Positions 6,944-63,980 of a stretch of 64,000 bases of DNA are shown here, piece by piece (the stretch's first letter is position 1; every line of letters starts with the position of its first letter). The stretch spans positions 11,408,001-11,472,000 of the forward strand of contig NC_043017.1 in the NCBI RefSeq assembly GCF_006345805.1, read 5' to 3'. The notes beneath the pieces were generated by a model, which saw only the letters and a list, made by a program, of their open reading frames with translations, did no database searches and had not been told where the DNA came from. The stretch comes from Octopus sinensis. Taxonomy: Eukaryota. The position numbers and the translations under genes were made by a program.

Positions 6944-7147
6944 GTTCCTGCTACATTAGCCAGAGTGAAAATATTGATTTCTGGACAGACACGGGTTCCG
7001 GTGAAATAAATTTTAAAAATTATGTTCACAATTCAACTTCTATAAAGATTTCTTGTAAATTGAATTCTCGGCTGTTGAATGGAACAGTCAACAAATTTAC
7101 CTGTCTTGAAGGAGAATGGAGCCCCCATGAACCATTTTGTGAAAAGA
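6944..7147 (+). CDS. Gene A exon: divergent sushi/CCP domain
   Basis: Acceptor ttgaaattccag|GT at 6943/4, donor A|gtaag at 7147/8, 204 nt, phase 1-1. Peptide GSCYISQSEN...ISCKLNSRLLNGTVNKFTCLEGEWSPHEPFCEK has the 4 Cys and Trp of a CCP. Confidence 0.85.
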
Positions 7148-7624
7148 GTAAGTTCTGTTTTCAGAAATATTGTTTCCAATGCAACATTTCCTATAATTCT
7201 TTAAATATTTTTGTTTTCACTTTTACGTCTGTTTATCCATGTTAGCATGGGTTAGATCAGTATGTTAATGAGGCATTGTGTCACAATGGATGTCCTTCCT
7301 GATCCCATCCTTCACTTGTTTTCCAAGTAGGGGATCGCTGATTCTACTTGGTATAAAAGGTGTGGGGTGAGGGAACTGGGAAGTGCCAACAATGACACTA
7401 CTTACAGATCTGACAAACACACACACACACTCACTCACACAAATACATATATATATATATATATGTTAGTATGGTCAGTTTGGTCATAGTTTGGTCAGTT
7501 AGTGGCTGGACTTCACAACCTCATATGTTCTTAAAATTTAAATCTACATCTTTATCTGTATACCTACCTTCTCTATAATGTTACTACTTGATTTGAAAGC
7601 TTTTGTATTATTGGAAAACCTATA

Positions 7625-7717
7625 TAATTGGCTGAAGAGCACTCAGCATCTTAAATCTGCTGTAATACTTACAACTTTTAATAAAATGTTGTAGTGCGAA
7701 ACAATTGTACCAAATTA
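7625..7717 (+). ncRNA. Type I hammerhead ribozyme motif, intact core
   Basis: TAATTGG / CTGAAGA 7632-38 / stem II GCACT...AGTGC / GAAA 7698-7701 / palindromic CAATTG / TA / CCAAATTA. Confidence 0.8.
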
Positions 7718-7743
7718 CCGGAGTCATTCTTGTTGCTTATTTT

Positions 7744-7793
<50 letters not shown>

Positions 7794-8153
7794 CCAAGGT
7801 GTATTGTATTTCCTTCTGATTGTAGCTGGGTAGTAGATCTACTGAGATTATGGAAAGTCCAGTTTGATTTAATTTATTTCTCATTTGCTTCAGCTTGACA
7901 AAATTGTCTTTTTAAAGTGATTCAAACTGGATGTTTATTAAGATGAAAAAAATGGAAATACTTTTTTTCTTTTCCTCTATGATAAATCTATTAAGGCATT
8001 TTCATTTTTTTCTAAATATAAATTTACTAGTGTGAAAACTCTAACCCATTTCAATAAACACACACATGCACGAATGCCCCCCCCCCACACACTACAACAC
8101 ATAATATATGTGTATTATGTATCTATTTATATCTTTTCTTGGTGTATTTACAG

Positions 8154-8408
8154 AACCTGTAAAGGCTCCAAAACTACTTAGGACTAATCCCGTCTGCAAA
8201 CATCCAGAACAAGGAGACAATGTTGTGTTTGTCTGGGACAATGTTGATTCCAGATTCAAAGGAAACAGTTTCATTGCCAATGGAACCAGCTTCCATGCTC
8301 GTTGTACTGATGTCGGTAATTTCCAGCTGTTGGGTTCCAATTTCCTTTCATGCCAGAATGGTATATGGTATGGAAAGTTACCAGTTTGCCAAAAAACTGA
8401 AGAAGATG
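8154..8408 (+). CDS. Gene A exon: sushi/CCP domain
   Basis: Acceptor tatttacag|AA, donor G|gtaaag, 255 nt, phase 1-1. VCKHPEQG...ARCTDVGNFQLLGSNFLSCQNGIWYGKLPVCQ. Confidence 0.9.
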
Positions 8409-8513
8409 GTAAAGTATCCCCTTGAAATTCATTGGGGTTTTTCTTAAAAACTAAATACAATTTTTTTTTCTCATAAATAAGAAAAATATTATTATTAGTG
8501 GTTTTTCTTCAAA

Positions 8514-8729
8514 CTCTCTCTCTTTTACTCTTTTACTTGTTTCAGTCATTTTGACTGCGGCCATGCTGGAGCACCGCCTTTAGTCGAGCAAATCAACCCC
8601 GGGACTTATTCTTTGTAAGCCCAGTGCTTATTCTATCGGTCTCTTTTGCCAAAACGCTAAGTTACAGGGACGTAAACACACCAGCATCGGTTGTCATACA
8701 ATGCTAGGGGGACAAACACAGACACACAA

Positions 8730-8760
<31 letters not shown>

Positions 8761-8945: not shown

Positions 8946-10034
8946 TGTGTTTGTGTTCTGAGTTCAAATTCTGCCAAGGTTGACTTTACCTTTCATCCTT
9001 TCAGGGTCGATAAAATAAGTACCAGCTGAGTATTGGGCTTGATGTAATCGACTTAACCCCTTCTCCAAAATTTCAGGCCTTGTGCCTTTAATAGAAAGGA
9101 TTATTATTATTATTATTATGAAGGTGGCCAGCTAACAGAATCGTTCAGATACTGGACAAAATGCTTAGCAACATTTCGTTCATCTTTACATTCTCAGTTC
9201 AAATTCTCCCGAGATCGACTTTGCCTTTCATCCTTTTGGCGGGGTCGATGAAATAAATACCAGTTATGCACTGGGTTCGATGTAATTGGCTAGCCCCATC
9301 CCCCCCTCAAATTCCTAGCCTTGTACATATAATGGAAAGGATTATTATTACTATTATTAAAGGCAGCGAGCTGGCAGGATTGTTAGCACGCCGGGTGAAA
9401 TGCTTAGTGGTATTTCGTCTGCCACTATGTTCCGAGTTCAAATTCCACTGAGATCGACTTTGCCTGGGGTTGATGTAATTGACTAGCCCCCCTTCCCCCC
9501 CCCCCCCCAAAAAAAATTCTCAAGGTTTTGGGCCTAGAGAAGTAATGATTATTATTGTTATTATTATCATTATTTTGTCCAGGAAATTTGAGGATTAAGG
9601 TTTTCAGCTGCATGAATAGACATATGTTAAGATGAGCCAGTGATGATGCTCCAGCATGGTCATTTGATTTGCTAAAGATATCACCTAAGTGTCAAATCAC
9701 TTCCTACCATCTTAGCAAAACGTGGTGGTGGAATGTTTTCCATTTTAACCACCACCACCACCACCACCACCACCACCATCACAAGCAAGAAGAACATCAA
9801 ACAAACTTTATTATGTCTTCATATAAGCACAGGAGTGGCTGCGTGGTAAGAAGCTTGCTTCCTGACCACATGGTTCTGGGTTCAGTCTCAATGCATGGCA
9901 CCATGGGCAAATGTCTTCTACAATAGCGTCAGGTCATCCAAAGCCTTGTGAGTGGATTTGATAGATGGAAACTGAAAGACGCCTGTTGTATAGATACATA
10001 CATATATATATGTGTATATATATATATCATCATC

Positions 10035-10430
10035 ATCATCATCATCGTTTAACGTCCGCTTTCCATGCTAGCATGGGTTGGACGGTTCAACTGGGGTCTG
10101 GCAAGCCCGAAGGCTGCACCAGGCCAGTCAGATCTGGCAGTGTTTCTACAGCTGGATGCCCTTCCTAACGCTAACCACTCCGAGAGTGTAGTGGGTGATT
10201 TTATGTGCCACCGACACAGGTGCCAGACGAAGCTGGCAGACGGCCACGCTCGGATGGTGTTTTTTATGTGCCACCGACACAGGTGCCAGACGAGGCTGGC
10301 TGACGGCCACGCTCAGATGGTGTTTTCTTATGTGTCACCGACACAGGTGCCAGACGGGGCTGGCGGACGGCCACGCTCGGATGGTGTTTGTTATGTGCCC
10401 TCAGCACGGAGGCCAGTCGTTGCGGTACTG
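10035..10430 (-). mobile_element. RTE 3'-tail element with about 4 internal tandem subrepeats, nested in a family 2 SINE
   Basis: Matches 13200-13412; GTGCCACCGACAC subrepeats of about 60 bp. Other copies at about 29500, 31620, 36015, 56230, 57170. Confidence 0.8.
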
Positions 10431-10451
10431 GCTATATATATACATATATAT

Positions 10452-10494
<43 letters not shown>

Positions 10495-10737: not shown

Positions 10738-10830
10738 AACCATAGTACCCATAGTAACCATAGCAACCATAGTAACCAAAGTAACCATAACAACCATAGT
10801 AACCATAGCAACCATAGTAACCATAGCAAC
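10738..10830. repeat. 9-bp minisatellite (CCATAG(T/C)AA) x about 10
   Basis: Direct reading. Confidence 0.85.
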
Positions 10831-12261: not shown

Positions 12262-13412
12262 CAGTGTAAGCTATGGACACATAAGAGGTGCAGCAACATC
12301 AATGGAAAATTAACCAAGAAGATAGCTTTCATGTGCGGCAGATGCACAGGGGCAATAGACACCATTGATATTCAGAAAACAGATTCCATTACAATCCTGA
12401 GGGAGAAACTAGAAGTAGTTGATAGTTTCTGCTACCTAGGTGACCAAGTTAGTAGTGGGGGTGGATGCTCAGAGAGTGTTACCACTAGAATAAGAATAGT
12501 CTGGGAAAAGTTTAGAAAGCTCCTACCCCTACTGGTGACAAAGGGTCTCTCGCTCAGAGTGAAAGGTAGATTGTACAAAGCATGTGTGTGAACTGCCATG
12601 CTTCATGGTTGTGAAACATGGGCTGTGACTGCAGAGAACATGCGTAGGCTTGAAAGAAATGAAGCTAGCATGATCCGCTGGATGTGTAATGTCAGTGTGC
12701 ATACACGACAGAGTGTAAGTGCTCTGAGAAAAATGCTGGACATAAGAAGCATTGGATGTGGCATGCAAGAGAGACGTCTGCACTGGTATGGTCATGTACT
12801 ATGGATGGATGAGGAGAGATGTGTGAAGAAGTGCCACTCCTAAACAGTTGAAGGAATCCGGGGTAGAGGTAGACCCAGGAAGACATGGGATGAGATCGTC
12901 AAGCATGACCTTCGAACGTTGGGTCTCACATAGGCAATGACGAAAGACCAAGACCTCTGGAGATATGCTGTGACTGCGAAGACCTGACAAATAACATGAG
13001 TTCATGGCTGTTTCCTGCACCAGCTTCACATAGAAGCCCCAGCTCATCCAAAGTGCCTTGGATCGCAGGACGGTCTGCTGTGTTTACCTTGCTGTGCTTG
13101 AGGAGACCTGTTGAGTCAAGTACATCAACATCAAAAAATCAAATTGTAGTTGTGATACTTGTGCCGGTGGCATGTAAAAAGCACCAACCAATCATGGCTG
13201 TTGCCAGCTTCCCCTGGCATCTGTGCCGGTGGCACATAAAAAGCAGCCACTACACTCACGGAGTGGTTGGCGTTAGGAAGGGCATCCAGCTGTAGAAACA
13301 CTCGCAGATCAGACTGGAGCCTGGTGCAGCCTCCTGGCTTCCCAGACCCCAGTCGAACCGTCCAACCCATGCTAGCATGGAAAACAGACGTTAGACGATG
13401 ATGATCATGATG
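12262..13412 (+). mobile_element. 5'-truncated RTE-clade LINE with 3' UTR and (GAT)n tail
   Basis: EVVDSFCYLGD...KGRLYKACV*TAMLHGCETW...RRLHWYGHV...GRGRPRKTW; in-frame stops. Confidence 0.9.
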
Positions 13413-13533
13413 ATGATATATATATGTATATATATATGTGTGTATGTATATATAATATATATATATATATATGTGTGTATATATATGACTATGTATGTAT
13501 ACATGTAGCTATGTGTTTTTACAAATGAATATA

Positions 13534-15753: not shown

Positions 15754-16088
15754 AATCTGCGCCACCAAGAATCTACATCAACATTACAACAACATGGAGC
15801 GATGAGAGAATAAGATATGTAGTTACTGCAAATGGAAGTGTTGTGATCAACGCAGGCGACCGACTGCAACTCGGCTGTTCGCACAACCTGTACGAAACAA
15901 AAGACTTAGAATGGGTGCCGCCAAATGACAGCATTCCGGTACCTGAAAGTATCCCAGAAACTATTGCTTCCAATGTCACTGGTGTCCGCCTGCATATTTC
16001 TCATTTCACACCAAATAATGTGGGACGATATATTTGTAGAATAAAAAACTCGTCGCTATTTCATTTTGTAAAGATTATAATTTTGTGA
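15754..16088 (+). CDS. Gene A terminal exon: Ig domain then stop
   Basis: Acceptor ctttatttaccag|AA, phase 1. ESAPPRIYINI...GDRLQLGCSH...LEWV...RLHISHFTPNNVGRYICRIK...KIIIL* shows the Ig Cys/Trp/G-x-Y-x-C pattern and several N-x-S/T sequons; TGA at 16086-16088. Confidence 0.88.
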
Positions 16089-16131
16089 CCATAATAACAA
16101 CGTTTTGATAATATAGCAGAAGGAAGACAGT

Positions 16132-16137
16132 AATAAA
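16132..16137 (+). promoter_or_regulatory. Candidate polyadenylation signal of gene A
   Basis: AATAAA 44 nt after the stop; AT-rich context makes it weak evidence. Confidence 0.4.
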
Positions 16138-16384
16138 ATGTTTTGTAAAATTATTGTTTTAATAATATGGTATAAGATTGTAAAATAATGTTTTGTAGAC
16201 ATTAAAATCATGTTGTTGACAGAAATAATTTTGTTTATTTTATTCATTTCACAATACATAACGTACTTCAACCCTTCTTCAACAATATTTTCATAAACCA
16301 TTTTTTTGTTTCTGCAAATTTTTTATTTACTATCATATGCATATATATATATATATTATAGATATATATATATGTATATATAAA

Positions 16385-16442
16385 GGCTTGTCTATCTATC
16401 TGTCTATCCGTCTGTCTGACTATCTATCTATCTATCTATTTG

Positions 16443-16487
<45 letters not shown>

Positions 16488-16514
16488 TTGTCTATCTATC
16501 TGTCTGTCTATCTA

Positions 16515-16558
<44 letters not shown>

Positions 16559-16654
16559 TCTACCTATCTCTCTATCTATCTGTCCGTCCGTCCGTCCATC
16601 TATCTATCTGTCTGTCTGTCTGTCTATCTGTCTGTCTGTCTGTCTATCTGTCTG

Positions 16655-16701
<47 letters not shown>

Positions 16702-16726
16702 GTCTGTCTGTCTATCTATTTAACTG

Positions 16727-16761
<35 letters not shown>

Positions 16762-16773
16762 CTATCAATTTAA

Positions 16774-16805
<32 letters not shown>

Positions 16806-16835
16806 ATCTGTCTGTCTGGCTGTCTGTCTATCTAA
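16385..16835. repeat. Compound (TATC)/(TGTC)/(TC)n microsatellite
   Basis: Direct reading. Confidence 0.9.
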
Positions 16836-17703
16836 TGGACAGACGATAGCCACATCGACTCCGCGTAAGTTTGCTTGTTTTTGCTTTCAAAAGTGTGTCT
16901 TGTAAAATATTTTTCATGAGAAAAGTTGTCCAACAAATTGTACATTCGATCTTGCAAATTGTTTCCACAGGAAACCTGCCCTGCGTGGCGTGTTTCCTAG
17001 TTTTGTGAATTTGTTTTCAGCTAAAATTAGCCATTTTGGTTAATGTCTTTCGTGGAGGTCTTGGCGGACGGCTTTGCGACGACATCGTTGTTGTTGGTGT
17101 TGATACTGGCATTCGCTGGTGTGAAATTTCTCTCTTCCGTCTTTCTTTCATGAAGTTATGGTGTTGGGAATGTTGGAAACTCAATATCAAACGTGTCTCC
17201 AAAGAGACTGGCGTTTATTTGAAAACTGTCTTCATGACTTCAAGACGCCATTCTCAAGAGGAAAATGGACGTTTACATTTTGATCCGGAAACGAAAATCC
17301 TCCCAAAAAATATTGGAATGGGTGTAAAACAGTGGGATTTACAGCATATTACGAGGTCACAGTACAAGATTCCACGCAAAAAATCAGTTTTTTTTTTTAG
17401 TGAAAATCGTGCGGGTGTTAATCTGTAATTTTACCACAATGGGTTATATAAAAAAAATTGCGCGCAAAGCAACGGGAGGATCAGGAGAGGACTTTGGAAA
17501 ATTCACAAGATCATAACTTTTAGGAAAATGGGATTTTTTTTTCAATGAAATTTTATAGAAATACTTTTCAAACGGCATACAATACGATTATAGAGTAATT
17601 TGTGGAGAAAATCTTTTCCAAGGATTAAGGAGAGGACTTCGGAAAATTCACAAGATCCAAGTTTTTCCATCATAACTATGTATGTGTATATGTGTGTGTG
17701 TGC

Positions 17704-17741
<38 letters not shown>

Positions 17742-18223
17742 CAAATAAGAAAATGGAGGAACATTTGGATGTTCCTATTTATGTAGCTAGTAAATAAATG
17801 ATATGAATTGGTAATATCTGTAAGTCGATGATTGAAAGGAATCTGTTCCTCCATTTTCTTATTTGTATTATGAATTTGAGGTAAGATATTTTTACCTTCG
17901 CCCATCTAATACAATAAATGAATTAATTGCAATTATAAGCATTTATGTATTAGCCTTTCTGGGTACTTCACCAGCAGTATATTGGATAACTGATGTCCCA
18001 TAGTGGGTTACACTCATAACCCCTATCTCACATTGTACTATATATATATATATGTCTATATATATATATATGTCTATATATATATGTCTATATATATATA
18101 TATATGTCTATATATATATATATGTCTATATATATATATGTCTATATATATATATATCTATATATATATATATATATATATGTCTATATATATATATATA
18201 TATATATGTCTAATATATATATA

Positions 18224-18603
18224 CTAGCAGTATCACCTGGCGTTGCTCGGGTTTGTAAGGGAAATAACTATAAAGCATTTTAGAGAGTTATAGCCAAAAA
18301 ATAGCAAAAAAATGGGGAAAAAATGATGGTAAATTTTTTTTTAGTTAAAAAGGTCGAGTTGCGTCCCCTAGACAGTCTGTGGTTTGTGTTTCTGATTCTC
18401 GACCCCATGTCGAATTTATCGATTTTTTTCAGAACTGGGGGAACTTTTCAAAATTTTCGCTGCGTTAGTTTTGAATTATGACATTGGGCTATGTGTGTGT
18501 CAAGTTTCATCAGAATCGGTTGAAAGCCGTGGTCAGAGTGAGGGTACAACCTAACAGACACACAGAAACACACACAGACAAACTGCCGTTTATATAGAGA
18601 GAG
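18224..18603 (+). mobile_element. Non-autonomous Helitron-like element in a TA tract
   Basis: Starts CTAGCAGTATCACCTGGCGTTGCTCGGG, ends ACAGACAAACTGCCGTTTATATAGAGAG; CpG-rich relative to flanks. Family assignment from memory. Confidence 0.5.
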
Positions 18604-18656
18604 ATATGTCTAATATATATATATATATATGTCTAATATATATATATATATATATG

Positions 18657-18700
<44 letters not shown>

Positions 18701-19647
18701 CGATCTCTATATATAGAGAGTGATTGAGAGAGAGGGAGAGAGAAAATAATAACGAGTAACTGAGAATAACGACGAAGGGTTAAAAAAGCGTAAAAATAAT
18801 TGAAAATGAAACAAAATTGAAGGCAAAACACTAAAAATTATTGAAAGTGGGTAGAAATAAACACTTCGAAGTGTAGTAGTATGCTAGGGTATCTGTAGAA
18901 AGTTGAATATGATATCGCAATATAACGAGGAAAAATTCGGATCTTGGGAATTTTCCGAAAGTCCTCTCCCCACCTCAAGATTTTCTCCACAAATTACTTT
19001 ATAGTCATAATGTAGGCCGTTTGAAAGGTAATTCTATAAAATTTCATTGAAAAAACCCCCCATTTTCATAAACATTACGAGGGAAAAGCTCATAACCCTA
19101 ACTGTAAAACCCTAACCCTAAGTAGAAAACTTAAAAAAAATTTTTTTCAGAATCATAATTTCCGTATTTTTCCACATATTTTGAAAAAAAAAAAATTCTG
19201 AAAAACGAAGAATTTAGGGGGTGGGGAGGGGTAATTTAAAATGCAAATTTTTGCTAATTTTTTTTGCAGATTCGTATTCTCCGTAGCCAAAAAAAAAGGA
19301 GTTTGTGTAGAAAAAAAAATTAAATTAAAAAAGGGGTGTTTTGGGGGGAGGTACAAAAGAAGTCTTGGATCTTTTCCTTTTGAACGGCACTTTTCAACAC
19401 AATTTCTAGTTAACTAAACACTTTTAAACTTCGTATACTGGTAGAATGTGTTTATAAAACATCATTTTTTCTTGGCTTTATTGAGAAAATTCTATAGGTT
19501 GTAAGATATTTCGTCTGAAATTTCGAGCATTTCGGCAATTTTAACCAATCACTGGAGTCCATTTAGGTAAACAACATTCCGTGCTGTATGAATATGTCCC
19601 TCTTTAAGAAACAGAGTTGTTGTTGTTTTTGTTGCTGCTGCTGCCGC

Positions 19648-19743
<96 letters not shown>

Positions 19744-19804
19744 TGTTGTTGTTGTTGTTCAGGTCACTGCCTGGAATCAAACCACTAAGCCATATACCCA
19801 TGGG

Positions 19805-20065
19805 CATAACATGTAGTGGTTAAGAACGCGGGCTACTAACCCCAAGATTCCGAGTTCGATCCCAAGCAGTGACCTGGACAATAATAATAACATCGAAAAA
19901 TACCTTAAGAATGAGAACCCAGGTTTAAAATTTCCCCAAGACATGTGAAGAAGGCTTGGAAGGTATATCAGCCGAAACGTGTTAACAACAAACAAGATGA
20001 GGAGAAATATCCATCGAATGTGAATAATGTACATAATTCCTCATCTCTTAAATATAGAACTGTAA
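19805..20065 (+). mobile_element. tRNA-headed SINE with a hammerhead-like tail
   Basis: TAGTGGTTAAG A box, GAGTTCGATCCC B box; GTGAAGA-AGGC...GCC-GAAACGT at 19945-19980. Confidence 0.6.
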
Positions 20066-20219
20066 CACAGAAAGACATCAACATCAAAACACCAACCAAT
20101 CATATTAATCTCTGATATGAACTTGTGTCTTTGGTATAAATAAGAACTCGTTAATATTAATATTAAAATTAAATTTGTTTTATTATCATTAAGAGTATAA
20201 ACATTCAATGTATCTCCAG

Positions 20220-20220
20220 G

Positions 20221-20254
<34 letters not shown>

Positions 20255-20290
20255 GTATATATGTATATATATTGTATATATATATATATG

Positions 20291-20349
<59 letters not shown>

Positions 20350-20389
20350 ATGTATATATATATGTATATATATTGTATATATATATATG

Positions 20390-20480
<91 letters not shown>

Positions 20481-20532
20481 ATATTATATATATATATGTA
20501 TATATATATGTATATATGTATGTATATATGTG

Positions 20533-20577
<45 letters not shown>

Positions 20578-20700
20578 ATATGTATATATATATATGTATG
20601 TATATATGTATGTATATATGTGTATATATATATGTACATATATGTATGTATATATATATATATACATGCATATATATATATACATTTATATATTTATAAT
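20220..20700. repeat. Interrupted (TA)n/(TATG)n tract of about 480 bp
   Basis: Direct reading; one of dozens of such tracts. Confidence 0.9.
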
Positions 20701-20706
20701 TTCCAT

Positions 20707-20712
20707 TTTATT
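20707..20712 (-). promoter_or_regulatory. Candidate polyadenylation signal of gene B
   Basis: AATAAA on the minus strand about 130 nt after the stop, just before a long TA tract. Confidence 0.35.
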
Positions 20713-20838
20713 TTCATTACATAACATAAACTTAAAAAAGAAATCTTACAAAATATTACTTCTCATTTTTAAAGAAAAGAAAGATTCAGAGAGTAAAAAA
20801 CAAAAAAGAGAAACAGTAAACAAAAACGCAAGCGACCC

Positions 20839-21038
20839 CTATCCCATGACAAAGGCGATACATTTAGGTTTGGGGTACAACCACATAAAATTAGACGAAC
20901 AAGTTATCTTTTCCTTTCCAAATAAAGTATATCCTGGATTGCAGTAAAATGTAACAACTGTATTCAAACCAAATGAAGAATCTGATACTGCTCGGTGACC
21001 ATTTTCTGGTGTACCTGGGTCCGTACACTTTTTGGCAT
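20839..21038 (-). CDS. Gene B terminal exon, CCP8 then stop
   Basis: Acceptor tttcttccag, phase 1. [12 protein letters not shown]...[36 protein letters not shown]. No usable donor after the last Cys and no transmembrane segment. Confidence 0.9.
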
Positions 21039-23794: not shown

Positions 23795-24858
23795 ATGAGT
23801 TTAAAAATGAGAACTCTGCAGCTAAAGCGACTTGAAATATTCACTTAGCTTATGGAGAAGAGTGCCTGAATGAAAGAACATGCAGAAGATGATTTGTAAA
23901 ATTCAGAAGTGGAGATTTCAGCCTTGAAGATGAGGCCCAAACAGTACATCCAACTGAGTTTCATGACAAACTTGTTTTGGCAGAACTTGAAAAAGATAAT
24001 GCAGTTTCAGTTGAAGAATTGGCAAGCAAGCTTCATTCAAGACATTCAACTGTTCACTGCCATCTTCAACAGCTTGGAAAGATCCCAAAATTTGGAAAAT
24101 GGGTGCTTCATGATTTGTCTGAAGCCATTTTCAAATTCTGAGAGGACACCTGCTCTTCTCTTCATTCTTGTGAACTCACCTTGCCTTTTTTGGACAGACT
24201 GGTGACCGGTGGTGAAAACTTGGTCTTTTATCAAAATGTTAGGTATCGTAAACATTGGCTTGATGAAGGGGAAAAGGCTCAACCACAACTGAAAAGGGAA
24301 CTCCATGTGAAGAAGGTTCTTCTCTGTTTAGTGAGATAGCAAAGGAGTCATCCACTTTGTGTTGCTACCAACTAATGCAATAATCAATGCTCAGATCTAC
24401 TGTCAGCAACTAGAGCATTTGAACAGTGCTCTGAAGAAAAAAACGGCCTGTTTAGTGAATTGAAAGGGAGTGGTGTTTCATCAGGACAATACAAAATCCC
24501 ACATGGCAAAGATCATGTCACAGAAGATCGAGGAAATTGGCTGGGAGAAAATTGCACATCCACTTCATTCCCCAGGCCTTGTGCCTTCAGATTATCATTT
24601 GCTCCATAGTTTACAGAATAATTTGGATGGATTAACTCTCAAAACAACTGAGGTAGTCGAAACTGACCTTTCAGAGTTCTTCTCTTTGAAACCGAAAGAG
24701 TTTTTCACTAATGGGATTAAAAAGCTTATGAGTAGATGGAAAGATGTCATTGGTAATCACGGAAACTATATTGACGATTAAGTTTCATTAAAATATAAGA
24801 TTTGATCACTTGTTTTCTGCATTTAAAATCCGGACATTACTCATGGGATGAGCTGATA
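23795..24858 (+). mobile_element. Mariner (DD34D-type) transposase remnant
   Basis: VFHQDNTKSH...HPLHSPGLVPSDYHLLHSLQN...GIKKLMSRWKDVIGNHGNYIDD; degenerate HTH and WVLHDL upstream. Confidence 0.88.
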
Positions 24859-31182: not shown

Positions 31183-31395
31183 CTGGGTAGAAGAACATAC
31201 ACCTGGGGGTATCACCTTCCCATCTGCCATTGTCACCACATCTCATTCTTTTTTTCCCATGTAGAGAATACCCAGGTTTACAAGAATATATAGCATGAGT
31301 TCCTGGTTCAATTTTGTTAGGATTGTCTGGCGTTGTCTCGAGTGTCATAAGGCCATTGACAGGTGTCAGAGGCTCCTCGCAAAATGAGGAATTGT
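31183..31395 (-). CDS. Gene B exon, CCP7
   Basis: Acceptor ttctttgcag, donor CCAG|gtaaca, 213 nt, phase 1-1. SFCEEPLTPVNG...YSCKPGYSLHGKKRMRCGDNGRWEGDTPRCMFFYP. The upstream T|gtatgt donor would remove the last Cys. Confidence 0.88.
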
Positions 31396-31946
31396 CTGCA
31401 AAGAAAATACGAGAAACAAAGTTAAAATGGAATCAAAGAAGAAGCACAGGAATGGTTGGAAAGTAAGAAGTTTGTTTCAGGTTCAGTTCCACTGCATGAC
31501 ACCTTGGGCAAGTTTCTTCTACCATAGCCTCAGGCCAACCAAAACCTTCTGAGTGGATTTGGTAGATGGAGACTGAAAGAAGCCTGTTGTATAATGTGTG
31601 TGTGTGTGTGTGTGCGTGTTGCCAGTGCTGCTGGACTGGCTCCTGTGCAGGTGGCACATAAAAAACACCAAACACCATTTGCGCGTGGCCGTTGCCAGTA
31701 CTACCTGACTGGCCCCATGCCAGTGACACATAAAAGCACCCACTACACTCTTGGAGTGGTTGGTGTTAGGAAGGGCATCCAGCTGTAGAAACTCTGCCAG
31801 ATCAAGATTGGAGCCTGGTTCGCCAGTGATCAGTCAAATCGTCCAACCCATGCTAGCATGGAAAGCGAACGTTAAACAATGATGATATATATATATATAT
31901 CATCATCATCATTGTTTTACATATATATATTTTATATAAATATATA

Positions 31947-36484: not shown

Positions 36485-36685
36485 CTTCAGTACATTTTAT
36501 ATCCCTAGTCCAAGTTCCATTGTGACACGACAATGACTTTGGCACTGACGGCCTATAACCAGGTTCACAATAGTAATTGACAGTGACTCTGTGTTTTATG
36601 GTGTCGTATGGCTTTAACCTGATCAAATTCAGGAAGTCTTGCTGGAAAATGTTAAGCCCTCGGACGTTTGGAATTGTGCATTTTG
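36485..36685 (-). CDS. Gene B exon, CCP6
   Basis: Acceptor cttttcacag, donor G|gtaaga, 201 nt, phase 1-1. KCTIPNVRG...YYCEPGYRPSVPKSLSCHNGTWTRDIKCTE. Confidence 0.9.
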
Positions 36686-37667: not shown

Positions 37668-37756
37668 CATAACACTTGGGGGTTTCTGCTGACCAGTGAC
37701 TGTCAACACAAACTGAAGATTCTGTTATGCCTTCAAATGTTGTGTCATAATTGCAA
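37668..37756 (-). CDS. Gene B exon, C-terminal half of CCP5
   Basis: Acceptor ttttttatag, donor G|gtaaat, 89 nt, phase 2-1. (S)CNYDTTFEGITESSVCVDSHWSAETPKCY completes the domain begun at 47769. Confidence 0.88.
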
Positions 37757-43125: not shown

Positions 43126-43147
<22 letters not shown>

Positions 43148-47684: not shown

Positions 47685-47769
47685 CTGAAAAATATAATAG
47701 ATCCTGCTTTATAACTTGATCCTGATATGGTTCCCAACCATAATGGTTCTGGTGCCTTACAACCAGTTT
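47685..47769 (-). CDS. Gene B exon, N-terminal half of CCP5
   Basis: Acceptor tatttttacag, donor AG|gtaagg, 85 nt, phase 1-2. ETGCKAPEPLWLGTISGSSYKAGSIIFF(S). Not in the ORF track in this frame. Confidence 0.88.
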
Positions 47770-49000: not shown

Positions 49001-49977
49001 GCCACCAATGGAGCTCCAAGTTAGTAGTTGTTGACACTATTCTATAATTTTTACAGAAATTTTTCGTTTCACTAGAATTTCGAACAAAAGCAAGGGGGAC
49101 TCAAATTATTTATTGTGCCAGAAGTGTTCTCTCACCTACCATTCTAAAGCTGTCCAGCGATTGCTACAACAACTAGAAATTATCTAACTAGTGGTTCTGC
49201 CTTCTGATTCAAACTGTTAACAGCAACAAACTTCACTCATCATCGAATGGCAATCAGTCTTAGTTAGGAGGAGGAGGAGGAAATTTGAGAAAGAATACTG
49301 AAGAAATAAAGGAAAACTGGCTTGAAAGAAAAATAAGATGGAAGAAGAGAACCAACATAAGTAGAATAAGCCAAACTAGAATGAGGGAAGAAGACAACAA
49401 AGAGATGAAGAAGAAGAAGAAAAAGAAGAATAAAGAAGATGAAAACAGAGAACAACTGTGTGAAGAACACCAGACTTAGCAGGAGTTTGATAGATTACAA
49501 CGCCAAAACAACTGGTGTTTCTTCCACACAAATATAAAAGTTGGCAGAACTTCACAAAAAATTGGTAACTTTATAAGCTGGATTTATATTATTTATATTA
49601 ACTTTGGTTGCTATAGCAACATGTTATAAAATCTTTATCTTCAATTTAACAATATCATTTGTGTTTTTTTTTTTTTTTGGATAGTTATTTGTTTATCAGA
49701 TAAAAAATGTTTGTGTTCTTGCTCTTACCAATACATTGTGGTTCTGTTCCTGTCCATGTTTCGTCTTCTCGGCACCGTCTTGAAGAGGGTCCTTGTAATT
49801 CAAAACCAATGTAGCAGGAATAATTTGCCAAACTATTCACAGAATATTCTGCAACAACGTGACCATTGGCTGGTGGTCTGAGAGTTCGACACTGGAATGC
49901 TGAGAATAATAATAAAAATAAATAACATAAATAAAAATCTTAATATTAATATTAAAATAGTAGTAGTGGTAGTATTG

Positions 49978-51707: not shown

Positions 51708-51878
51708 CAACACATTTCGGTTGTGAGCCTGTCCACGTGAGGTTCTCCGTACACCTACGTTCTACATCGCCAACCAATTTGAAGCCACTGTAACAGACAT
51801 ACTTTGTCACATCATTGTATTTATTGCTGCCAAACTTGCCACCATTCTCTGGTTTCTCCAAGACGGGACACACTTCAC
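51708..51878 (-). CDS. Gene B exon, CCP4
   Basis: Acceptor catatttcag, donor G|gtaagt, 171 nt, phase 1-1. EVCPVLEKPENG...YVCYSGFKLVGDVERRCTENLTWTGSQPKCV. Confidence 0.93.
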
Positions 51879-55580: not shown

Positions 55581-56600
55581 ATAATAATATCTCCCCAACT
55601 CAAGAGAGTGGTTACCCATGTATTCATTGCTTGGAACTTATACTGACAACAATAACAACAACAACTACAGTGTTAATTATTGAAGAAAACTGAGACAATG
55701 TTCTCTGATTCCGGTCGCTAATAGTTTGGTAAAAATAATAATCTGAACTTGTTAAACTGTGTAAACTAATAGTAAACCATTTACTTATCCCACTGTGTTT
55801 TGTTCGATATCGGTTCATCTAAGAAGGTGGGGCTGCACTTAGAAACATCTCAAGCTTTTTCTATACGGAATGGGTGGGTGCAGGAAATTTGGTAAAAGTC
55901 TAAGGATTTGTTTGTGAATAACTTAAATTCTTTGCACAAACAACTTTCCCTGTTATCGTTTTAGTGTCCACTTTTTCCATGCTTGCGTGGGTCAGATGGA
56001 ATTTGTTGTGGCAGATTTTCTCTACAGCTGGATGCCCTTCCTGTCACCAACCCTTTCCTGTTTCCAGACAAAATAATATTCACCCATGACCAAACATGTT
56101 TCCATGGAAACAGATGACACTGCTTGTATGATGGTGACACTCGGGCTGACCAAAGCCTGGTGAGTGGATTTAGTAGATGGAAACTGAAAGATGCCCATCG
56201 TATATATATATGTGTGTGTGTGTGTGTGTATATATCATCATCATCATCGTTTAGCGTCTGCTTTCCATGCTAACATGGGTTGGACAGTTCAACTGGGGTC
56301 TGGGAAGCCAGAAGGCTGCACCACCCCAGTCTGATCTGGCAATATTTCTACGGCTGGATGCCCTTCCTAATGCCAACTACTCCATGAGTGAAGTGAGTGC
56401 TTTCTACGTGCCACTGGTACAGGTGCCAGACGAGGCTGGCAAACGGCCACGATCGGATGGTGCTTTTTACGTGCCACCGGCACGAGGCCAGTCGGGGCGG
56501 CGCTGGCAACGGCCACGTTCGGGTGGTTCTCTTACGTACCACCGGCACTGGTATCACAGCTGCAATTTCCATTGATGTTGATCGATTTCGATTTTGATTT

Positions 56601-56969: not shown

Positions 56970-58135
56970 AGTGTCTGGTGTTTTCAGGTGAATATCATAC
57001 AGCTGCATTCATTGAGATGGTCTGTGGATTGCAAAATAGCCATGAACTCAGCTGTGCAGAGATCACACTTGTTATTATATCCGCTGTAAGGTTTGGTGTG
57101 GGTGACTATGGACCACTTGAGAGTGTAAGGGATTGAATCAAGTGTTAGTTTACTGATAAGTTGAGATAACGATGTACGTCTGGCACGTAAAAAGCACTCA
57201 CTACACTCATGGAGTAGTTGGCATTAGGAAAGGCCCCAACTGGCCTCGTGCCAGTGGCACGTAAAAAGCACCATCTGATTGTGGCCGTTTGCCAGCCTCG
57301 TCTGGCACGTAAAAAGCACTCACTACACTCATGGAGTAGTTGGCATTAGGAAAGGCATCCAGCCGTAGAAACATTGCCAGATCAGACTGGGCCTGGTGCA
57401 GCCTTCTGGCTTCCCAGACCCCAGTGGAACCGTTTGGGGTTTGAAGCTAGAGTAGTGATTGCTCACTCTAGCATTGAAAGTGGTGCTACATGGGCCAATG
57501 TAAATATAAATTTACATAGGGTCTTCCAGCAGCTACCCTCTTCACCCAGGGCAGAACTACCTCCTCCAGACACTTGATGTAGGCTTCCATGTTGAGTCTG
57601 AGGCTGTGTGGGAAGATGAATGGAGGCATAACGTCACCATCACTAGTGATCATTCCAAACACCATGATGTTGACTGGATGTTTGATTTTTATCCCTCTTG
57701 GTTGTTAGCTGATATTATGCACTTGTAAACTATGTTTTTAGTGAGACTGGTTATTTATAGGACAGGAGGTTGGGCAGCTGAAGCTGCATAGGTTTGTAGG
57801 GGGTGGTCCAGATGAGCTTGTAAGGGGATTGTTATTTAGTGAGGAATTGGTGTTCAGTTCATTATTATAGTTGGTGCTAAAGTTATCATTTGATAAGGAG
57901 TTCAGGATGGTGTTGTTGGGTTGTATGGTATGATAATTATTGTGTTTGGTGGTATCCTCTGGGATGTTCTCTGTTATGACAGGAGGTAAATTTGGGCATT
58001 GTGGTACATTTAAGGGTCAGGTGTTAGCATTGGCATTATAGTTGTAATTATGAGTGTTAGTGTTGTTAAGGGGGCCAGTTGGTGCATTGGGTTTATATGT
58101 ATGGAGCTGGGGTTATGTTGAATAAATTTACTGGG
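56970..58135 (-). mobile_element. Penelope-like endonuclease remnant split by nested insertions
   Basis: Pieces KNIVYKCII (about 57700-57760), YIGPCSTTFNARVSNHYSSF (57430-57525) and LKWSIV...KCDLCTAE (56970-57180). A related piece lies at about 54750-54935. Confidence 0.65.
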
Positions 58136-59214: not shown

Positions 59215-59977
59215 AGTGGTGGACTGGATCTAAAAATAAAGCAATTCACTCTGCCAGAAATTTGGAAACAACATGCTGAACTGCTTGGTATTTGTGCCAA
59301 AAGCTCCAATACAAACATTACAAAGTGTTTGAGTGTTAATCTGAGGACATGTACCAAGAGTGATAAAAATCAAACATCCAGTCAACATCATGGTGTTTGG
59401 AATGATCACTGATGGTGGTGATGTTATGCCTCCATTCATCTTCCCACACAGCCTCAGACTCAACATGAAGGCCTACATCAAGTGTCTGGAGGAGGTAATT
59501 CTGCCCTGGGTGAAGAGGGTAGCTGCTGGAATACCCTATGTCTGGCAATAGGACTCTGCACCATGCCACACAAGCAGGAGAACCAAGTCGTGGCTGTCAG
59601 ACAATTTCTGCGACCACATAATCCCAAACATCTGGCCACCCAACTCCCCAGACTGCAACCCCCTTGATTATTATGTGTGGGGTGCAGTCAAGTGAGAGAC
59701 CAACAAAACTCCCTTGTAACAGCAAAGATGAGCTGAGGGCAAGGATTATGATACCATTCACTAACTTAAACAAGGAGACCATCCAGAAGAGTTGCAGGAG
59801 ATTCCAAAGTGGTCTGGAGGTCGTGGTTGAAGCCAATGGCGATTTTATTGAATAAATTTACTCTTTAGTATTTCAAGATATTTTTATGTAATTTTGGTAA
59901 ATATATTTGTTAAAATGAGATGTCAGTGTTATTTTCATTTTTGCATAATTTAGACAACAGTTTGTTCACTGCACCCT
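59215..59977 (+). mobile_element. maT-type (DD37D) remnant
   Basis: Same family; 37 residues between the Asp of QDSAP and the Asp of NPLD. A further minus-strand fragment lies at 57525-57692. Confidence 0.8.
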
Positions 59978-60237: not shown

Positions 60238-60245
60238 TCTATAAA

Positions 60246-60286
<41 letters not shown>

Positions 60287-60457
60287 TACATACATACATA
60301 TACACATACATACACAGTATGTATACACCCACACATACCTGATACACATGCTCACATATACACATACACTGAATTTGAAATAGGACAAAATATGGAAATG
60401 TGCTCACGATAGCATAAAAGGAAAGAAGGCAAAAAATTCCTCGAACAATCTACTCAC

Positions 60458-60631
60458 GTTGGCAAGTGGACATTGGCCCGTCCCAGTTACCGTCTTCTTG
60501 GCACACTCGAAACTTCTGACCAATCAACTTGTGTCCAATGTCACAGTGGAAGAATATTTTCGACATGTACGTGTATTTACTTCCTTCGATTCGTCCACCT
60601 GAAATCTCACCTGGAGGACTGCAATGCATTG
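60458..60631 (-). CDS. Gene B exon, CCP3
   Basis: Acceptor ctgtttccag, donor C|gtgagt, 174 nt, phase 1-1. MHCSPPGEISGG...FHCDIGHKLIGQKFRVCQEDGNWDGPMSTCQ. Confidence 0.93.
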
Positions 60632-61379
60632 CTGGAAACAGAAACACAGACTATGCAATTGTGGAAATGGGATGTTGTGATATTCATACTTTTCCAGACA
60701 TGATCACAATCAGTAAAATTTATGTTTTCTCAGTGAATGCAATTGAAACTGCTTCAAATTAAAATCGTTATCTGTGTTTCTTACTAAATATATGTACACC
60801 ATTGAAAGGCATGAAGCTGTAGTATTTGTCTGAGATAAAATCTCTACATAGGTTTGTTTGTTTAAAAACAGAATAACACAGTAACTCACAAGAATGACAG
60901 AGATATTTTGCCTTTGTTAAGGCTTATCAGTGCTATGCATATGATTAGTTGCTTATTTTCAGCTAAATTTGGAAACAGTAATACATTCACTGGTATTGGG
61001 AAAGCTTGCTGGATTAATACAAATGAAACAGTATTATATTAAAATTACTATCTGTATATCATACTAAATGTATTAGCACTCTTTTAAGACATGATACTGT
61101 GGTTATTGTGTGAGATAAAATTTCATCATAAACTTATATTAAAACACTATATATGTCATTGTGATCATATGAACAATAAACGTTTTATCGTACTAGGGTT
61201 TGTGAAAAGGGTTCCAAGTAGGACAAAATGCATCTGCCATTCTTGATTTGTCAACTAAACCCTTCAAGGTGGTGCCCCAACTTGGCCACAGTCAAATGAC
61301 TGGAACAAATAAAAGATAAAGAATTAAAAGATAAAATAAAAAAATAAAAGATTATAGTATTTGAAACTGAAATACTCAC

Positions 61380-61574
61380 GTTCACATTTCATAGTAAGAT
61401 CTTTCCAGCTTGCCGTAGTGCCATCACACCTTGCTATGGTGTTACCAACATGGAAATAACCAGGAATACAACTGTACAAGAGGGCACTGCCATGAGGAAA
61501 TGCTGGTCGGACTAAAGAAGCATTGTGCCGAGCTTCCAGAATGGCAGGAGGTTTGCCACAGAAACTTGGTTTCA
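61380..61574 (-). CDS. Gene B exon, CCP2
   Basis: Acceptor caattgcag, donor C|gtgagt, 195 nt, phase 1-1. FCGKPPAILEARHN...YSCIPGYFHVGNTIARCDGTTASWKDLTMKCE. Confidence 0.92.
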
Positions 61575-61823
61575 CTGCAATTGAAAAAAAAATATTCCTT
61601 AAAAAAATTCAGTAAAGCAAAATTCTTACTCATTTCAAAAATTCATTAACAGCTTATAAAAAATTTATTAAAAATATTTCCAAAAAATTAATTTTAAAAA
61701 ATATGACTCATTTTTGCTGGCTGAGAAGACTGGAACAATGAGGAATAAAGTGTGTTGCTCAAGGACACAGCATGCTTCTAGGAATTGAACTCATGAACTT
61801 ATGATCCCCAGTTGACTACATTA

Positions 61824-62209
61824 GGAGGAAGCACTCCGTCGGTTATGACGACGAGGGTTCCGGTTGATCCGATCAACGGAACAGCCTGCTCGTGAAATTA
61901 ACGTGTAAGTGACTGAGCACTCCACAGACACGTGTACCCTTAACGTAGTTCTCGGGGATATTCAGCGTGACACAGAGAGTGACAAGGCCGGCCCTTTGAA
62001 ATACAGGTACAACAGAAACAGGAAGTAAGAGTGAGAGAAAGTTGTGGTGAAAGAGTACAGCAGGGATCACCACCATCCCTGCCGGAGCCTCATGGAGCTT
62101 TAGGTGTTTTTGCTCAATAAACACTCACAACGCCCGGTCTGGGAATCGAAACCGCGATCCTACGACCGCGAGTCCGCTGCCCTAACCACTGGGCCATTGC
62201 GCCTCCACT
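61824..62209 (-). mobile_element. Young tRNA-derived SINE with 13-bp TSD
   Basis: A box TGGCCCAGTGG, B box GGTTTCGATTCC; GTTGACTACATTA at 61811-61823 and 62210-62222. Related older copies at about 58375-58740 and 62470-62790. Confidence 0.9.
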
Positions 62210-63791
62210 GTTGACTACATTAACCACTAAGCCACAAGCCTCATTTGACAATGGGGATTGAGTTACCTGTTCAACTGGATGGACTGCTTCTGGATTAACA
62301 TGGCTGAGTATTCCAGAGGTATGTGTACCTTCACGTAATTCACAGGTAATATTAATCTGACACAGTGTGTAACAAGACAGTACTTTTTTCAATTACAGGT
62401 AAAACCCACCTGATGGGTCTCTCTACACCTGACATTTACTTCCTTTAACCCTCCTTCAGCATTTAAAGGCATCTGGTTTAACAATTAGGGCTCGTGAGTG
62501 TAAAGTTCTGACTTCCATACTCAGGGGTGCACTGTGTCCTTCAGCAAGACACTTCATTTCACTTTATTGCTCCAGTCAACTCAGCTGGCAAAAATGAGTT
62601 GTACCTGTAATTCAAAGGGCCAGCCTTGTCACATTTTGCGTCACACTGGATCTCCCCAGGAACTACATTAAGGATATGTGTATTTGTGGAATGTCTGGCC
62701 ACTTGGACGTTAATCTCTTGAGCAGGTTATTCCATTGATCGGATCACCTGAACCCTTGATGTAACTGATGGAGAGCCAGTCTAGCATTGAAACCAGCCAT
62801 ATCTGGCCTACATGTTCCATTTGTCTTCTGTTCATACAAGCCATATCTGGCCCCTTACACTTACCCTGAAATGTCATTCTAGAAATAAGCAAACACATCA
62901 CTGAAATCTCAAAGTTATTAGATTATGCATGATTAATCCAAAACAAAATGAGTAAATAAGCAAGATATTTGTTGACAGAATAATTTGAATGCTAAAGGGT
63001 CAAACCCTTTAATCCCTACATAGCACAGGCCATCAATGACTTTTCTCTTCTTGACTTGGGGACTTCCTTTTCTGCCCCTCTCCAATTGGATTCCTGCTTT
63101 TCCTTACAGTTTCTTTTCCAATTTCCCTAAGGGGAGGAGGCTGCCTTCCTCTCCCAGGTCTTGATGGTTTTGAATTGTCATCAATGCTTCTAGAACTTTC
63201 CTTTTTTATCTTGGTTGAGGTAGGTACTGGTGCTACACAAACCTATTTTTACCTCTGAGTGTGTGGCCTCTATCCTTTGACCTGTCCAGCATGGGAGTGT
63301 AGGGGTGAGAGCAGGGGCTACCAGGAGCTGGCACTCTACTAGCATAATCTCAGGGTCACTGAGATATACAAACCACAACACCACAAGGACTGGACAAAAT
63401 TTCACACAGAAGTTGCAGGTTGACCCTTGACCCAAAGCTATAAAAAAATCATACTGCTGCCCCAAATGCAGCATTATGGGTTTGAACCAATGTCCTCATG
63501 GTTGCAAAGCAAACTTCTTAACCATTTGACTATACATGCACCGATACCTAACAATAAAATGGAAGGAAAATCATCAACATCATCATCACCATCATCATAA
63601 TTGTTTTAACCTTTAAAACATTTACGTGCATGTATGGAGTGGACAGAATTTTGCTGAGCCAAATTTTTCCATGACTGGATGCCTTACCTGTCACAAACCT
63701 TCACCTGTTTCCATGCAAGGTAATTCCCCATAACCAGATATATTTTCACAGAAGATTAGATATGAATGTAATCGAAAATAATCATACTTAC

Positions 63792-63980
63792 ATAAACACC
63801 TTGGCGGTTCATTATCCCAGACACCCCTGGCTTGGCAATTCAGAGTTGCAGATCCGATAAGCTTCATGCCATCGGCGCAGGAATAAATCACATGACGAAC
63901 TGGTTCGTCTCGTATTCGCGCTTCTCCGTTCTCAATTTCAGGAGGTGCCCCACACAACTCGTTCAGTTTTTCTCGACTCA
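63792..63980 (-). CDS. Gene B (LEV-9/Hasp-like CCP array) exon, CCP1 in window
   Basis: Acceptor tttttattag, donor T|gtaagt, 189 nt, phase 1-1. LCGAPPEIENG...YSCADGMKLIGSATLNCQARGVWDNEPPRCL. Confidence 0.92.

What the first reader, a model, noticed from the sequence alone, without database searches (positions are those of the whole stretch)
6944..63980. Two LEV-9/Hasp/Hig-type CCP genes tail-to-tail, or one gene broken by an inversion
Seen: 8 CCPs on minus ending in a stop at 20839, and CCP-CCP-Ig on plus ending in a stop at 16088, with phase-1 junctions between domains and no transmembrane segment. Known: C. elegans LEV-9 (WAP + 8 CCP) and Drosophila Hasp (WAP + CCPs) and Hig (Ig + CCPs) are secreted organisers of cholinergic synapses. 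From memory, both CCP2-CCP6 of gene B and the CCP-Ig pair of gene A resemble parts of arthropod LEV-9/Hasp-like proteins. I found no start or signal exon for gene A in the window. Flipping the gene A block would put its exons in spliceable order behind gene B as an alternative 3' end (CCP7 donor to the 6944 acceptor, both phase 1). Options: linked paralogues, a true inversion/fission, a mis-oriented contig, or, least likely, trans-splicing between strands.
Basis: partly seen in the sequence, partly recalled or inferred. Interest (0 to 1): 0.7.

Follow-up and report, generated by a model that had tools for sequence, protein, structure and literature searches.

The report
Two annotated convergent octopus CCP genes
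The window holds the 3' ends of two separate octopus genes for multi-CCP (sushi) proteins that point at each other; both are already annotated, the arrangement is conserved across cephalopods, and nothing is broken or inverted.

Summary
The window is Octopus sinensis CM016879.1:11408001-11472000. Gene B (minus strand) gives residues 215-775 of XP_029649017.1, which is a signal peptide plus 12 CCPs with no WAP domain. Gene A (plus strand) gives residues 450-712 of XP_029648920.2, which is a divergent CCP array ending in an Ig domain.

The window therefore holds 9 CCPs of gene B, not 8.

Gene A shows no start exon only because the window cuts it. Seven more coding exons lie to the left, the nearest 970 bp outside the window.

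The tail-to-tail layout recurs in O. vulgaris, O. bimaculoides, Argonauta and a cuttlefish. Squid or cuttlefish mRNAs end gene B after CCP12. A cuttlefish mRNA joins gene A's tail to its own upstream CCPs. This rules out an inversion, a mis-oriented contig and trans-splicing.

The LEV-9/Hasp/Hig label is not established:
- Gene B has no WAP domain.
- Gene A's Ig domain is C-terminal, unlike Hig.
- Similarity to a mussel 'lev-9-like' protein is no stronger overall than to an unrelated CCP protein, with only partial domain collinearity.

This is an ordinary, already annotated locus of unknown function.

The parts
63792..63980 (-). Gene B exon, CCP4 of 12 (first gene B exon inside the window); phase 1-1
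   Evidence: AG/GT boundaries, and part of a spliced peptide identical to P0053 residues 215-775.
61380..61574 (-). Gene B exon, CCP5; phase 1-1
60458..60631 (-). Gene B exon, CCP6; phase 1-1
51708..51878 (-). Gene B exon, CCP7; phase 1-1
49729..49899 (-). Gene B exon, CCP8; phase 1-1
47685..47769 (-).
   Evidence: tblastn of P0001 against the window, sequence read, exact splice check.
37668..37756 (-).
36485..36685 (-). Gene B exon, CCP10 (long, atypical CCP); phase 1-1
31183..31395 (-).
20839..21038 (-). Gene B last coding exon, CCP12 plus stop codon (20839-20841)
   Evidence: The octopus orthologues end with nearly the same C-terminal peptide, and the Argonauta, squid and cuttlefish proteins also end a few residues after CCP12.
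16089..20838 (.). 4750-bp interval between the two stop codons (3' UTRs and intergenic DNA of the convergent pair)
   Evidence: The spacing matches the RefSeq gene ends in L002 exactly. Poly(A)-signal hexamers occur on both strands.
6944..7147 (+). Gene A exon, CCP (third-from-last coding exon); phase 1-1
   Evidence: Pfam Sushi. Identical to P0049. Conserved in O. bimaculoides, O. vulgaris and Argonauta.
8154..8408 (+). Gene A exon, linker plus divergent CCP; phase 1-1
15754..16088 (+). Gene A last coding exon, Ig domain plus stop codon (16086-16088)
   Evidence: Pfam ig, Ig_3 and I-set. Representative search found P0017 at 93% identity. PDB matches to CEA and DIP-alpha Ig domains. Identical to P0049.

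Best explanation
The window covers the 3' parts of two independent, convergently transcribed protein-coding genes of Octopus sinensis. Both are already RefSeq models.

Gene B is XP_029649017.1 (auto-named 'SVEP1'), 775 aa, made of a signal peptide and 12 CCP modules. It has no WAP domain and no transmembrane segment. CCP4 to CCP12 lie in the window, in 10 exons.

Gene A is XP_029648920.2 (auto-named 'complement factor H-like'), 712 aa. It is an array of roughly nine divergent CCP-like modules followed by one C-terminal Ig domain. Only its last three coding exons lie in the window, because the window boundary cuts the gene.

Shown here: exon structure, identity to the RefSeq models, conserved convergent synteny, purifying selection, transcript support in decapodiform relatives, and gene B's secreted architecture.

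Inferred: both proteins are extracellular binding or scaffold proteins built from CCP modules. A synaptic-matrix role like that of LEV-9/Hasp is possible for gene B but is untested.
For: - The window is identical to CM016879.1 from position 11408001.
- The spliced window exons equal P0053 residues 215-775 and P0049 residues 450-712 exactly, with AG/GT at every junction.
- Gene A has seven further coding exons at window positions -15665 to -970.
- A convergent neighbour gene with Sushi and Ig hits sits next to the gene B orthologue in four other assemblies: O. bimaculoides, O. vulgaris, Argonauta and Acanthosepion pharaonis.
- Full-length mRNA contigs encode 779 aa and stop after CCP12.
- A cuttlefish mRNA contig carries gene A's upstream CCPs and the CCP-Ig tail in one frame.
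- dN/dS is 0.31 for the gene A tail and 0.38 for gene B against O. bimaculoides, and lower against Argonauta.
- Pfam finds 12 Sushi repeats and nothing else in the gene B orthologues P0001 and P0003.
- The hydropathy scan shows only an N-terminal signal peptide in gene B.
Against: - Gene A's annotated start is not a real N-terminus. The Met lies inside a CCP exon that has an upstream phase-1 acceptor, and no signal peptide is present. Gene A's secretion and true 5' end are therefore not shown.
- A third same-strand CCP gene ends 6.6 kb upstream of gene A in O. bimaculoides. Gene A could be an alternative 3' part of that gene rather than a stand-alone gene.
- I examined no octopus RNA data directly. 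The transcript support comes from decapodiform relatives and from the RefSeq models.
- The function is purely inferred.
Confidence: 0.93

Rival explanations
1. Gene B is the cephalopod orthologue of LEV-9/Hasp with the WAP domain lost. Gene A is a Hig-like Ig plus CCP partner. Both act as secreted organisers of cholinergic synaptic clefts.
For: - Gene B is a secreted pure CCP array.
- Its best non-cephalopod hit is a Mytilus protein that NCBI names 'lev-9-like'.
- The CCP-by-CCP matrix shows partial collinearity with that protein, including the two atypical modules (octopus CCP 5, 7, 9, 10 to Mytilus 2, 6, 7, 8). Two control CCP proteins show none.
- The WAP domain is dispensable for LEV-9 function (PMC9083331).
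- Gene A combines CCPs with a single Ig, as Hig does.
Against: - There is no WAP domain in octopus, squid or cuttlefish proteins or mRNAs.
- The Mytilus N-terminal Cys-rich module is itself not recognised as WAP by Pfam.
- The overall BLASTP score to Mytilus 'lev-9-like' (179 bits, 27% identity) does not exceed that to an unrelated lectin-CCP-TM protein (189 bits).
- PDB hits are generic complement regulators.
- Gene A ends in the Ig domain, whereas leafhopper Hig is laid out CCP-Ig-CCPs with C-terminal CCPs (PMC7180231).
- Two searches found no non-cephalopod relative of gene A.
- No LEV-9, Hasp or Hig sequence could be retrieved for a direct test.
Confidence: 0.2
2. This is one ancestral gene broken by an inversion or fission. 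Gene A's CCP-CCP-Ig block was once, or still is, an alternative 3' end of gene B.
For: Only that the 31183 donor and the 6944 acceptor are both phase 1, and that gene A lacks a start exon in the window.
Against: - All CCP exons here are phase 1-1, so phase compatibility is generic.
- Gene A has seven upstream exons of its own.
- Gene B ends after CCP12 in octopods, squid and cuttlefish alike, including in mRNA contigs.
- The convergent layout predates the octopod-decapod split.
- Gene A and gene B CCPs are only 21-24% identical.
Confidence: 0.02
3. An assembly artefact: the 1-20 kb block is mis-oriented in this contig.
Against: The same orientation, with similar spacing (about 2.7 to 9 kb between gene ends), appears in five independently assembled genomes of five species. 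The window has no N gaps.
Confidence: 0.01
4. Gene A is not a stand-alone gene but the distal part of the upstream same-strand CCP gene (878-aa product). That would give a much longer CCP protein with alternative 3' ends.
For: - Gene A's first annotated exon starts with a phase-1 acceptor, and its ORF extends upstream of the annotated Met. The model has no signal peptide.
- The upstream gene lies on the same strand, 6.6 kb away in O. bimaculoides, and is also built of CCP exons.
Against: - The upstream gene has its own terminal CCP exon with a conserved stop codon in two species.
- Three annotation pipelines keep the two genes separate.
- The cuttlefish mRNA contig does not reach far enough 5' to decide.
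Confidence: 0.15

Closest known systems
RefSeq models XP_029649017.1 (gene B) and XP_029648920.2 (gene A) of Octopus sinensis, with their orthologues in O. bimaculoides, O. vulgaris, Argonauta and Acanthosepion
   Same: The spliced window exons match them exactly. The gene order, orientation and C-termini are the same.
   Different: Nothing differs: the finding is these two genes. Their automatic names ('SVEP1', 'complement factor H-like', 'CSMD') do not fit the domain content, which is Sushi only, or Sushi plus one Ig.
C. elegans LEV-9 and Drosophila Hasp (secreted WAP plus CCP-array organisers of cholinergic synapses)
   Same: Gene B is a secreted protein made of a long uninterrupted CCP array (12, against 8 in LEV-9 and up to 17 in Hasp) with no TM segment. 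A mussel relative with partial domain collinearity is named 'lev-9-like' by NCBI.
   Different: Gene B has no WAP domain. Orthology could not be tested because the reference sequences were not retrievable. Overall similarity is no higher than to unrelated CCP proteins. No data on localisation or function exist.
Drosophila and insect Hig (hikaru genki): one Ig plus five CCPs
   Same: Gene A combines CCP modules with a single Ig domain and has no TM segment.
   Different: Gene A has about nine CCP-like modules rather than five. Its Ig is the very C-terminal domain, whereas leafhopper Hig is CCP-Ig-CCPs with C-terminal CCPs. No signal peptide is present in the current models. No detectable non-cephalopod homologue was found.
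Vertebrate regulators of complement activation (CR1, CR2, factor H, DAF)
   Same: These are the best solved-structure matches of gene B (CR1 E 8e-131, CR2 and CFH E 1e-60 to 1e-70). Like gene B, they are arrays of CCP modules.
   Different: The similarity is at the level of generic repeats (about 25% identity, with many register-shifted alignments). CR1 and CR2 are membrane proteins. A role in complement regulation is not implied.

Membership tests
LEV-9/Hasp | N-terminal WAP (four-disulfide core) domain between the signal peptide and the first CCP | tested here: not met
   Pfam on P0001 and P0003 finds only Sushi. In P0053 residues 1-94 the signal peptide runs straight into CCP1. Full-length squid or cuttlefish mRNAs show the same.
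LEV-9/Hasp | Secreted protein: signal peptide and no transmembrane segment | tested here: met
   The hydropathy scan finds only the N-terminal hydrophobic stretch, residues 9-27. No dedicated signal-peptide predictor was available.
LEV-9/Hasp | Uninterrupted array of CCP domains (8 in LEV-9, up to 17 in Hasp; PMC9083331) | tested here: met
   12 Sushi repeats and no other domain. This feature is generic and shared with many other families.
LEV-9/Hasp | Sequence orthology to C. elegans LEV-9 or Drosophila Hasp | tested here: inconclusive
   The reference sequences were never retrieved. The proxy is Mytilus 'lev-9-like': 27% identity, 179 bits, no better than an unrelated CCP protein at 189 bits, but with partial module collinearity that the controls lack.
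LEV-9/Hasp | Localisation at cholinergic synapses and a requirement for AChR clustering | not testable with these tools
   This needs expression and localisation data and genetics.
Hig (hikaru genki) | One Ig-like domain plus five CCPs, with CCPs C-terminal to the Ig | tested here: not met
   Gene A has about nine CCP-like modules, and the Ig domain is followed directly by the stop codon. NcHig is laid out CCP1-IG-CCP2 with CCPs at residues 396-631 of 636.
Hig (hikaru genki) | Detectable sequence homology to insect Hig | tested here: inconclusive
   Word-index and full-HMMER searches returned only cephalopod relatives and generic Ig-repeat proteins. No Hig sequence was in hand for a direct comparison.
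SVEP1 (RefSeq name of gene B) | vWA, EGF, pentraxin and HYR domains in addition to CCPs | tested here: not met
   Pfam finds Sushi only.
CSMD (name given to the cuttlefish orthologue) | Alternating CUB and sushi domains plus a transmembrane segment | tested here: not met
   No CUB hit and no TM segment.
Complement factor H (RefSeq name of gene A) | 20 canonical CCPs and no other domain | tested here: not met
   Gene A has divergent CCPs, of which Pfam detects only 3 stretches, plus a C-terminal Ig domain.

The most novel reading that the evidence does not exclude
Gene B is the cephalopod LEV-9/Hasp counterpart with the WAP domain lost. Gene A is a lineage-specific CCP plus Ig partner that plays a Hig-like role. 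Their tail-to-tail linkage, kept since before the octopod-decapod split, reflects coupled regulation of a two-component synaptic-cleft matrix for cholinergic synapses in cephalopod brains.
Probability: 0.08. Interest if true: 0.45.

Novelty: already known. Interest (0 to 1): 0.1.

Why it matters
As it stands, it matters little. Both genes are already predicted in public annotations, and the puzzling 'headless' gene A is an effect of the window edge.

The useful by-products are annotation notes:
- The automatic names (SVEP1, CFH-like, CSMD) are misleading.
- Gene A's 5' end and signal peptide are missing from all the gene A models read here (O. sinensis, O. bimaculoides, O. vulgaris).
- The O. 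vulgaris model drops the Ig exon.
- The pair sits in a small, conserved cluster of CCP genes.

If gene B proved to be a true LEV-9/Hasp orthologue, it would be a candidate for studying how cholinergic synapses are organised in cephalopods. That remains a hypothesis.

Tried and rejected
- The word-index homologue search with the spliced gene A peptide found nothing. This was a miss by the index, not absence: XP_029648920.2 and its orthologues are in the collection.
I used the Ig exon alone instead.
- A profile of gene B and gene A relatives plus Mytilus 'lev-9-like', meant to pull in LEV-9, Hasp or Hig, returned only generic vertebrate and invertebrate CCP proteins. It did not even re-list Mytilus. 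All three searches of that kind are now used.
- Nakayama et al. 2016 (PMC6602034) is not held.
- A search of papers for the SRA run numbers and XP accessions found nothing.
- Pfam did not confirm the transposon-like ORFs in the introns.
- The older O. bimaculoides 946-aa model (P0073) looked like a possible fusion. It is gene B with spurious low-complexity exons.
- The O. vulgaris extra 5' exon of gene A is not conserved in O. bimaculoides and has no signal peptide.
- A Mytilus neighbour search found no CCP-Ig gene within 10 kb of the 'lev-9-like' gene.


Full report
**What is in the sequence**

A six-frame scan finds CCP-type open frames (four Cys plus one Trp) on the minus strand near 63.9, 61.5, 60.6, 51.8, 49.9, 36.6, 31.3 and 21.0 kb. 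On the plus strand there are two CCP-like frames near 6.9 and 8.2 kb and an Ig-like frame ending at 16088. Each frame is bounded by a pyrimidine-rich AG acceptor and a GT donor in phase 1.

The three plus-strand exons give 263 aa with Sushi at E 2.4e-5 and weak Ig hits at E 2e-5 to 1e-4.

**Identity of the locus**

The gene B peptide hits an Octopus bimaculoides protein of 775 aa, with further relatives in Argonauta, two decapodiforms and Mytilus. Cluster look-up gave the O. sinensis and O. vulgaris members.

The gene A peptide found nothing in the word-index search. A full HMMER search with the Ig exon then found a 709-aa O. bimaculoides protein at 93% identity. Its O. sinensis cluster-mate is XP_029648920.2, 712 aa.

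Fetching the genomic locus of that protein showed that the window is O. sinensis CM016879.1 from position 11408001, base for base.

The spliced window exons reproduce residues 215-775 of XP_029649017.1 (gene B) and residues 450-712 of XP_029648920.2 (gene A) exactly.

**Correction to the observation**

In the window it is split by a phase-2 intron into exons 47769-47685 and 37756-37668. The window therefore holds nine CCPs of gene B (CCP4 to CCP12 of 12) in ten exons.

**Is gene A headless?**

It is not. XP_029648920.2 is encoded by ten exons over 31.7 kb. Seven of them lie left of the window, at window coordinates -15665 to -970. The window simply cuts the gene 970 bp after its seventh exon.

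Every inter-domain junction in both genes is phase 1, as is usual for CCP modules, so it carries no information.

**Inversion, mis-orientation or trans-splicing?**

The same convergent pair appears in four other assemblies, as well as in O. sinensis itself. In each, a gene B orthologue is followed by a gene on the opposite strand that ends in the orthologous Ig exon.

- O. bimaculoides: about 2.7 kb between gene ends.
- O. vulgaris: consecutive accessions.
- Argonauta: about 3.6 kb.
- The cuttlefish Acanthosepion pharaonis: about 9 kb.

The arrangement therefore predates the split between octopods and decapodiforms.

Transcript evidence agrees. Logan mRNA contigs of 3.5-4.3 kb carry a complete 779-aa gene B ORF that stops after CCP12. 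Cuttlefish mRNA contigs carry gene A's upstream CCPs and its CCP-Ig tail on one strand and in one frame, interrupted only by a roughly 150-nt stretch with two stops that looks like a retained intron.

Both genes are under purifying selection. Against O. bimaculoides, dN/dS is 0.31 for the gene A tail and 0.38 for gene B. The values are lower against Argonauta. No stop codons occur.

Gene A and gene B are only 21-24% identical, so they are not recent duplicates.

**What the proteins are**

Gene B has a hydrophobic N-terminal signal sequence followed directly by 12 CCPs. It has no other Pfam domain and no TM segment.

Gene A has about nine divergent CCP-like modules, of which Pfam recognises only three stretches, and one C-terminal Ig domain. 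It has no hydrophobic segment at all.

Gene A's annotated Met sits inside a CCP exon whose frame continues upstream to a phase-1 acceptor. The true 5' end, including any signal peptide, is therefore unannotated.

**Family call**

A review defines LEV-9 as WAP plus 8 CCPs, Hasp as WAP plus up to 17 CCPs, and Hig as 5 CCPs plus 1 Ig (PMC9083331). Leafhopper Hig is laid out as CCP-Ig-CCPs, with the CCPs at the C-terminus (PMC7180231).

Gene B lacks WAP. Gene A ends in its Ig domain.

I could not retrieve LEV-9, Hasp or Hig sequences, because searches returned only generic CCP proteins. The only proxy is a Mytilus protein that NCBI names 'lev-9-like'.

- Its BLASTP score to gene B (179 bits, 27% identity) is no higher than that of an unrelated lectin-CCP-TM insect protein (189 bits).
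- A module-by-module score matrix is perfectly diagonal for octopus against squid.
- For octopus against Mytilus it is partly collinear, including the two atypical modules CCP9 and CCP10. Two control proteins show no collinearity.
- The Mytilus N-terminal Cys-rich module is not recognised as WAP by Pfam.
- The solved-structure matches of gene B are generic complement regulators.

My conclusion is that a shared molluscan orthogroup is plausible. Membership in LEV-9/Hasp or Hig is unproven, and each family fails one architectural criterion.

**Verdict**

This is an ordinary, already annotated pair of convergent CCP genes. The 'broken gene' reading is an artefact of the window boundary. The proposed function as extracellular CCP scaffolds, possibly synaptic, is inference only.

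Noticed in passing
L002 about 9900-10147 (O. sinensis, about 15.7 kb left of the window): Gene A's RefSeq start codon lies inside a CCP exon. The frame stays open upstream to a phase-1 AG acceptor (…VGCQKLRNSKY-MTVSV…), and the model has no signal peptide. The 5' end of the gene is unannotated.
   Followed up: partly
L003 3200-3418 (O. bimaculoides); L004 80-298 (O. vulgaris): A third CCP gene (878-aa product) lies on the same strand as gene A. It ends with its own CCP exon and a TGA stop, 6.6 kb upstream of the gene A model in O. bimaculoides and 9.7 kb upstream in O. vulgaris. The locus is a small CCP gene cluster. Whether this gene supplies gene A's missing 5' exons is untested.
   Followed up: partly
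L004 43172-43504 (O. vulgaris): The O. vulgaris gene A model CAI9738440.1 ends in a spurious peptide and omits the Ig exon. That exon is intact in the genome, at 99% amino-acid identity.
   Followed up: yes
window 43133-43502 and 44110-44481: A tandem duplication of about 979 bp (two copies, 95-99% identical) lies inside the long gene B intron between the exons at 47.7 and 37.7 kb. It also produces duplicated spurious ORFs at 43577-43873 and 44556-44852.
   Followed up: yes
window 10029-10343, 13162-13414, 29537-29810, 31623-31886, 36010-36332, 56234-56547, 57233-57433: An interspersed SINE-like repeat of about 320 bp has at least seven copies at 76-87% identity on both strands, all intronic or intergenic. 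One copy lies directly downstream of the CCP10 exon.
   Followed up: partly
window 3245-3697, 12331-12843, 24470-24781, 34482-35098, 38015-38800, 57486-57665, 59360-59855: ORF fragments that look by eye like transposable-element remnants: mariner/Tc1-type transposase, a reverse-transcriptase tail, and a GIY-YIG-like fragment. Pfam confirmed only a weak zf-RVT hit at 38167-38412.
   Followed up: partly
L005 about 1150-1300 (cuttlefish mRNA contig, Logan SRR7369732): The gene A-like transcript has two in-frame stops in a stretch of about 150 nt between the upstream CCPs and the tail. This is probably a retained intron or an alternative exon.
   Followed up: no
whole window: Microsatellites of TA/CA/TATG type are very dense. 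They produce dozens of long spurious 'YIYIYI' and 'HTHTHT' ORFs on both strands. G+C content is 26-45%.
   Followed up: no
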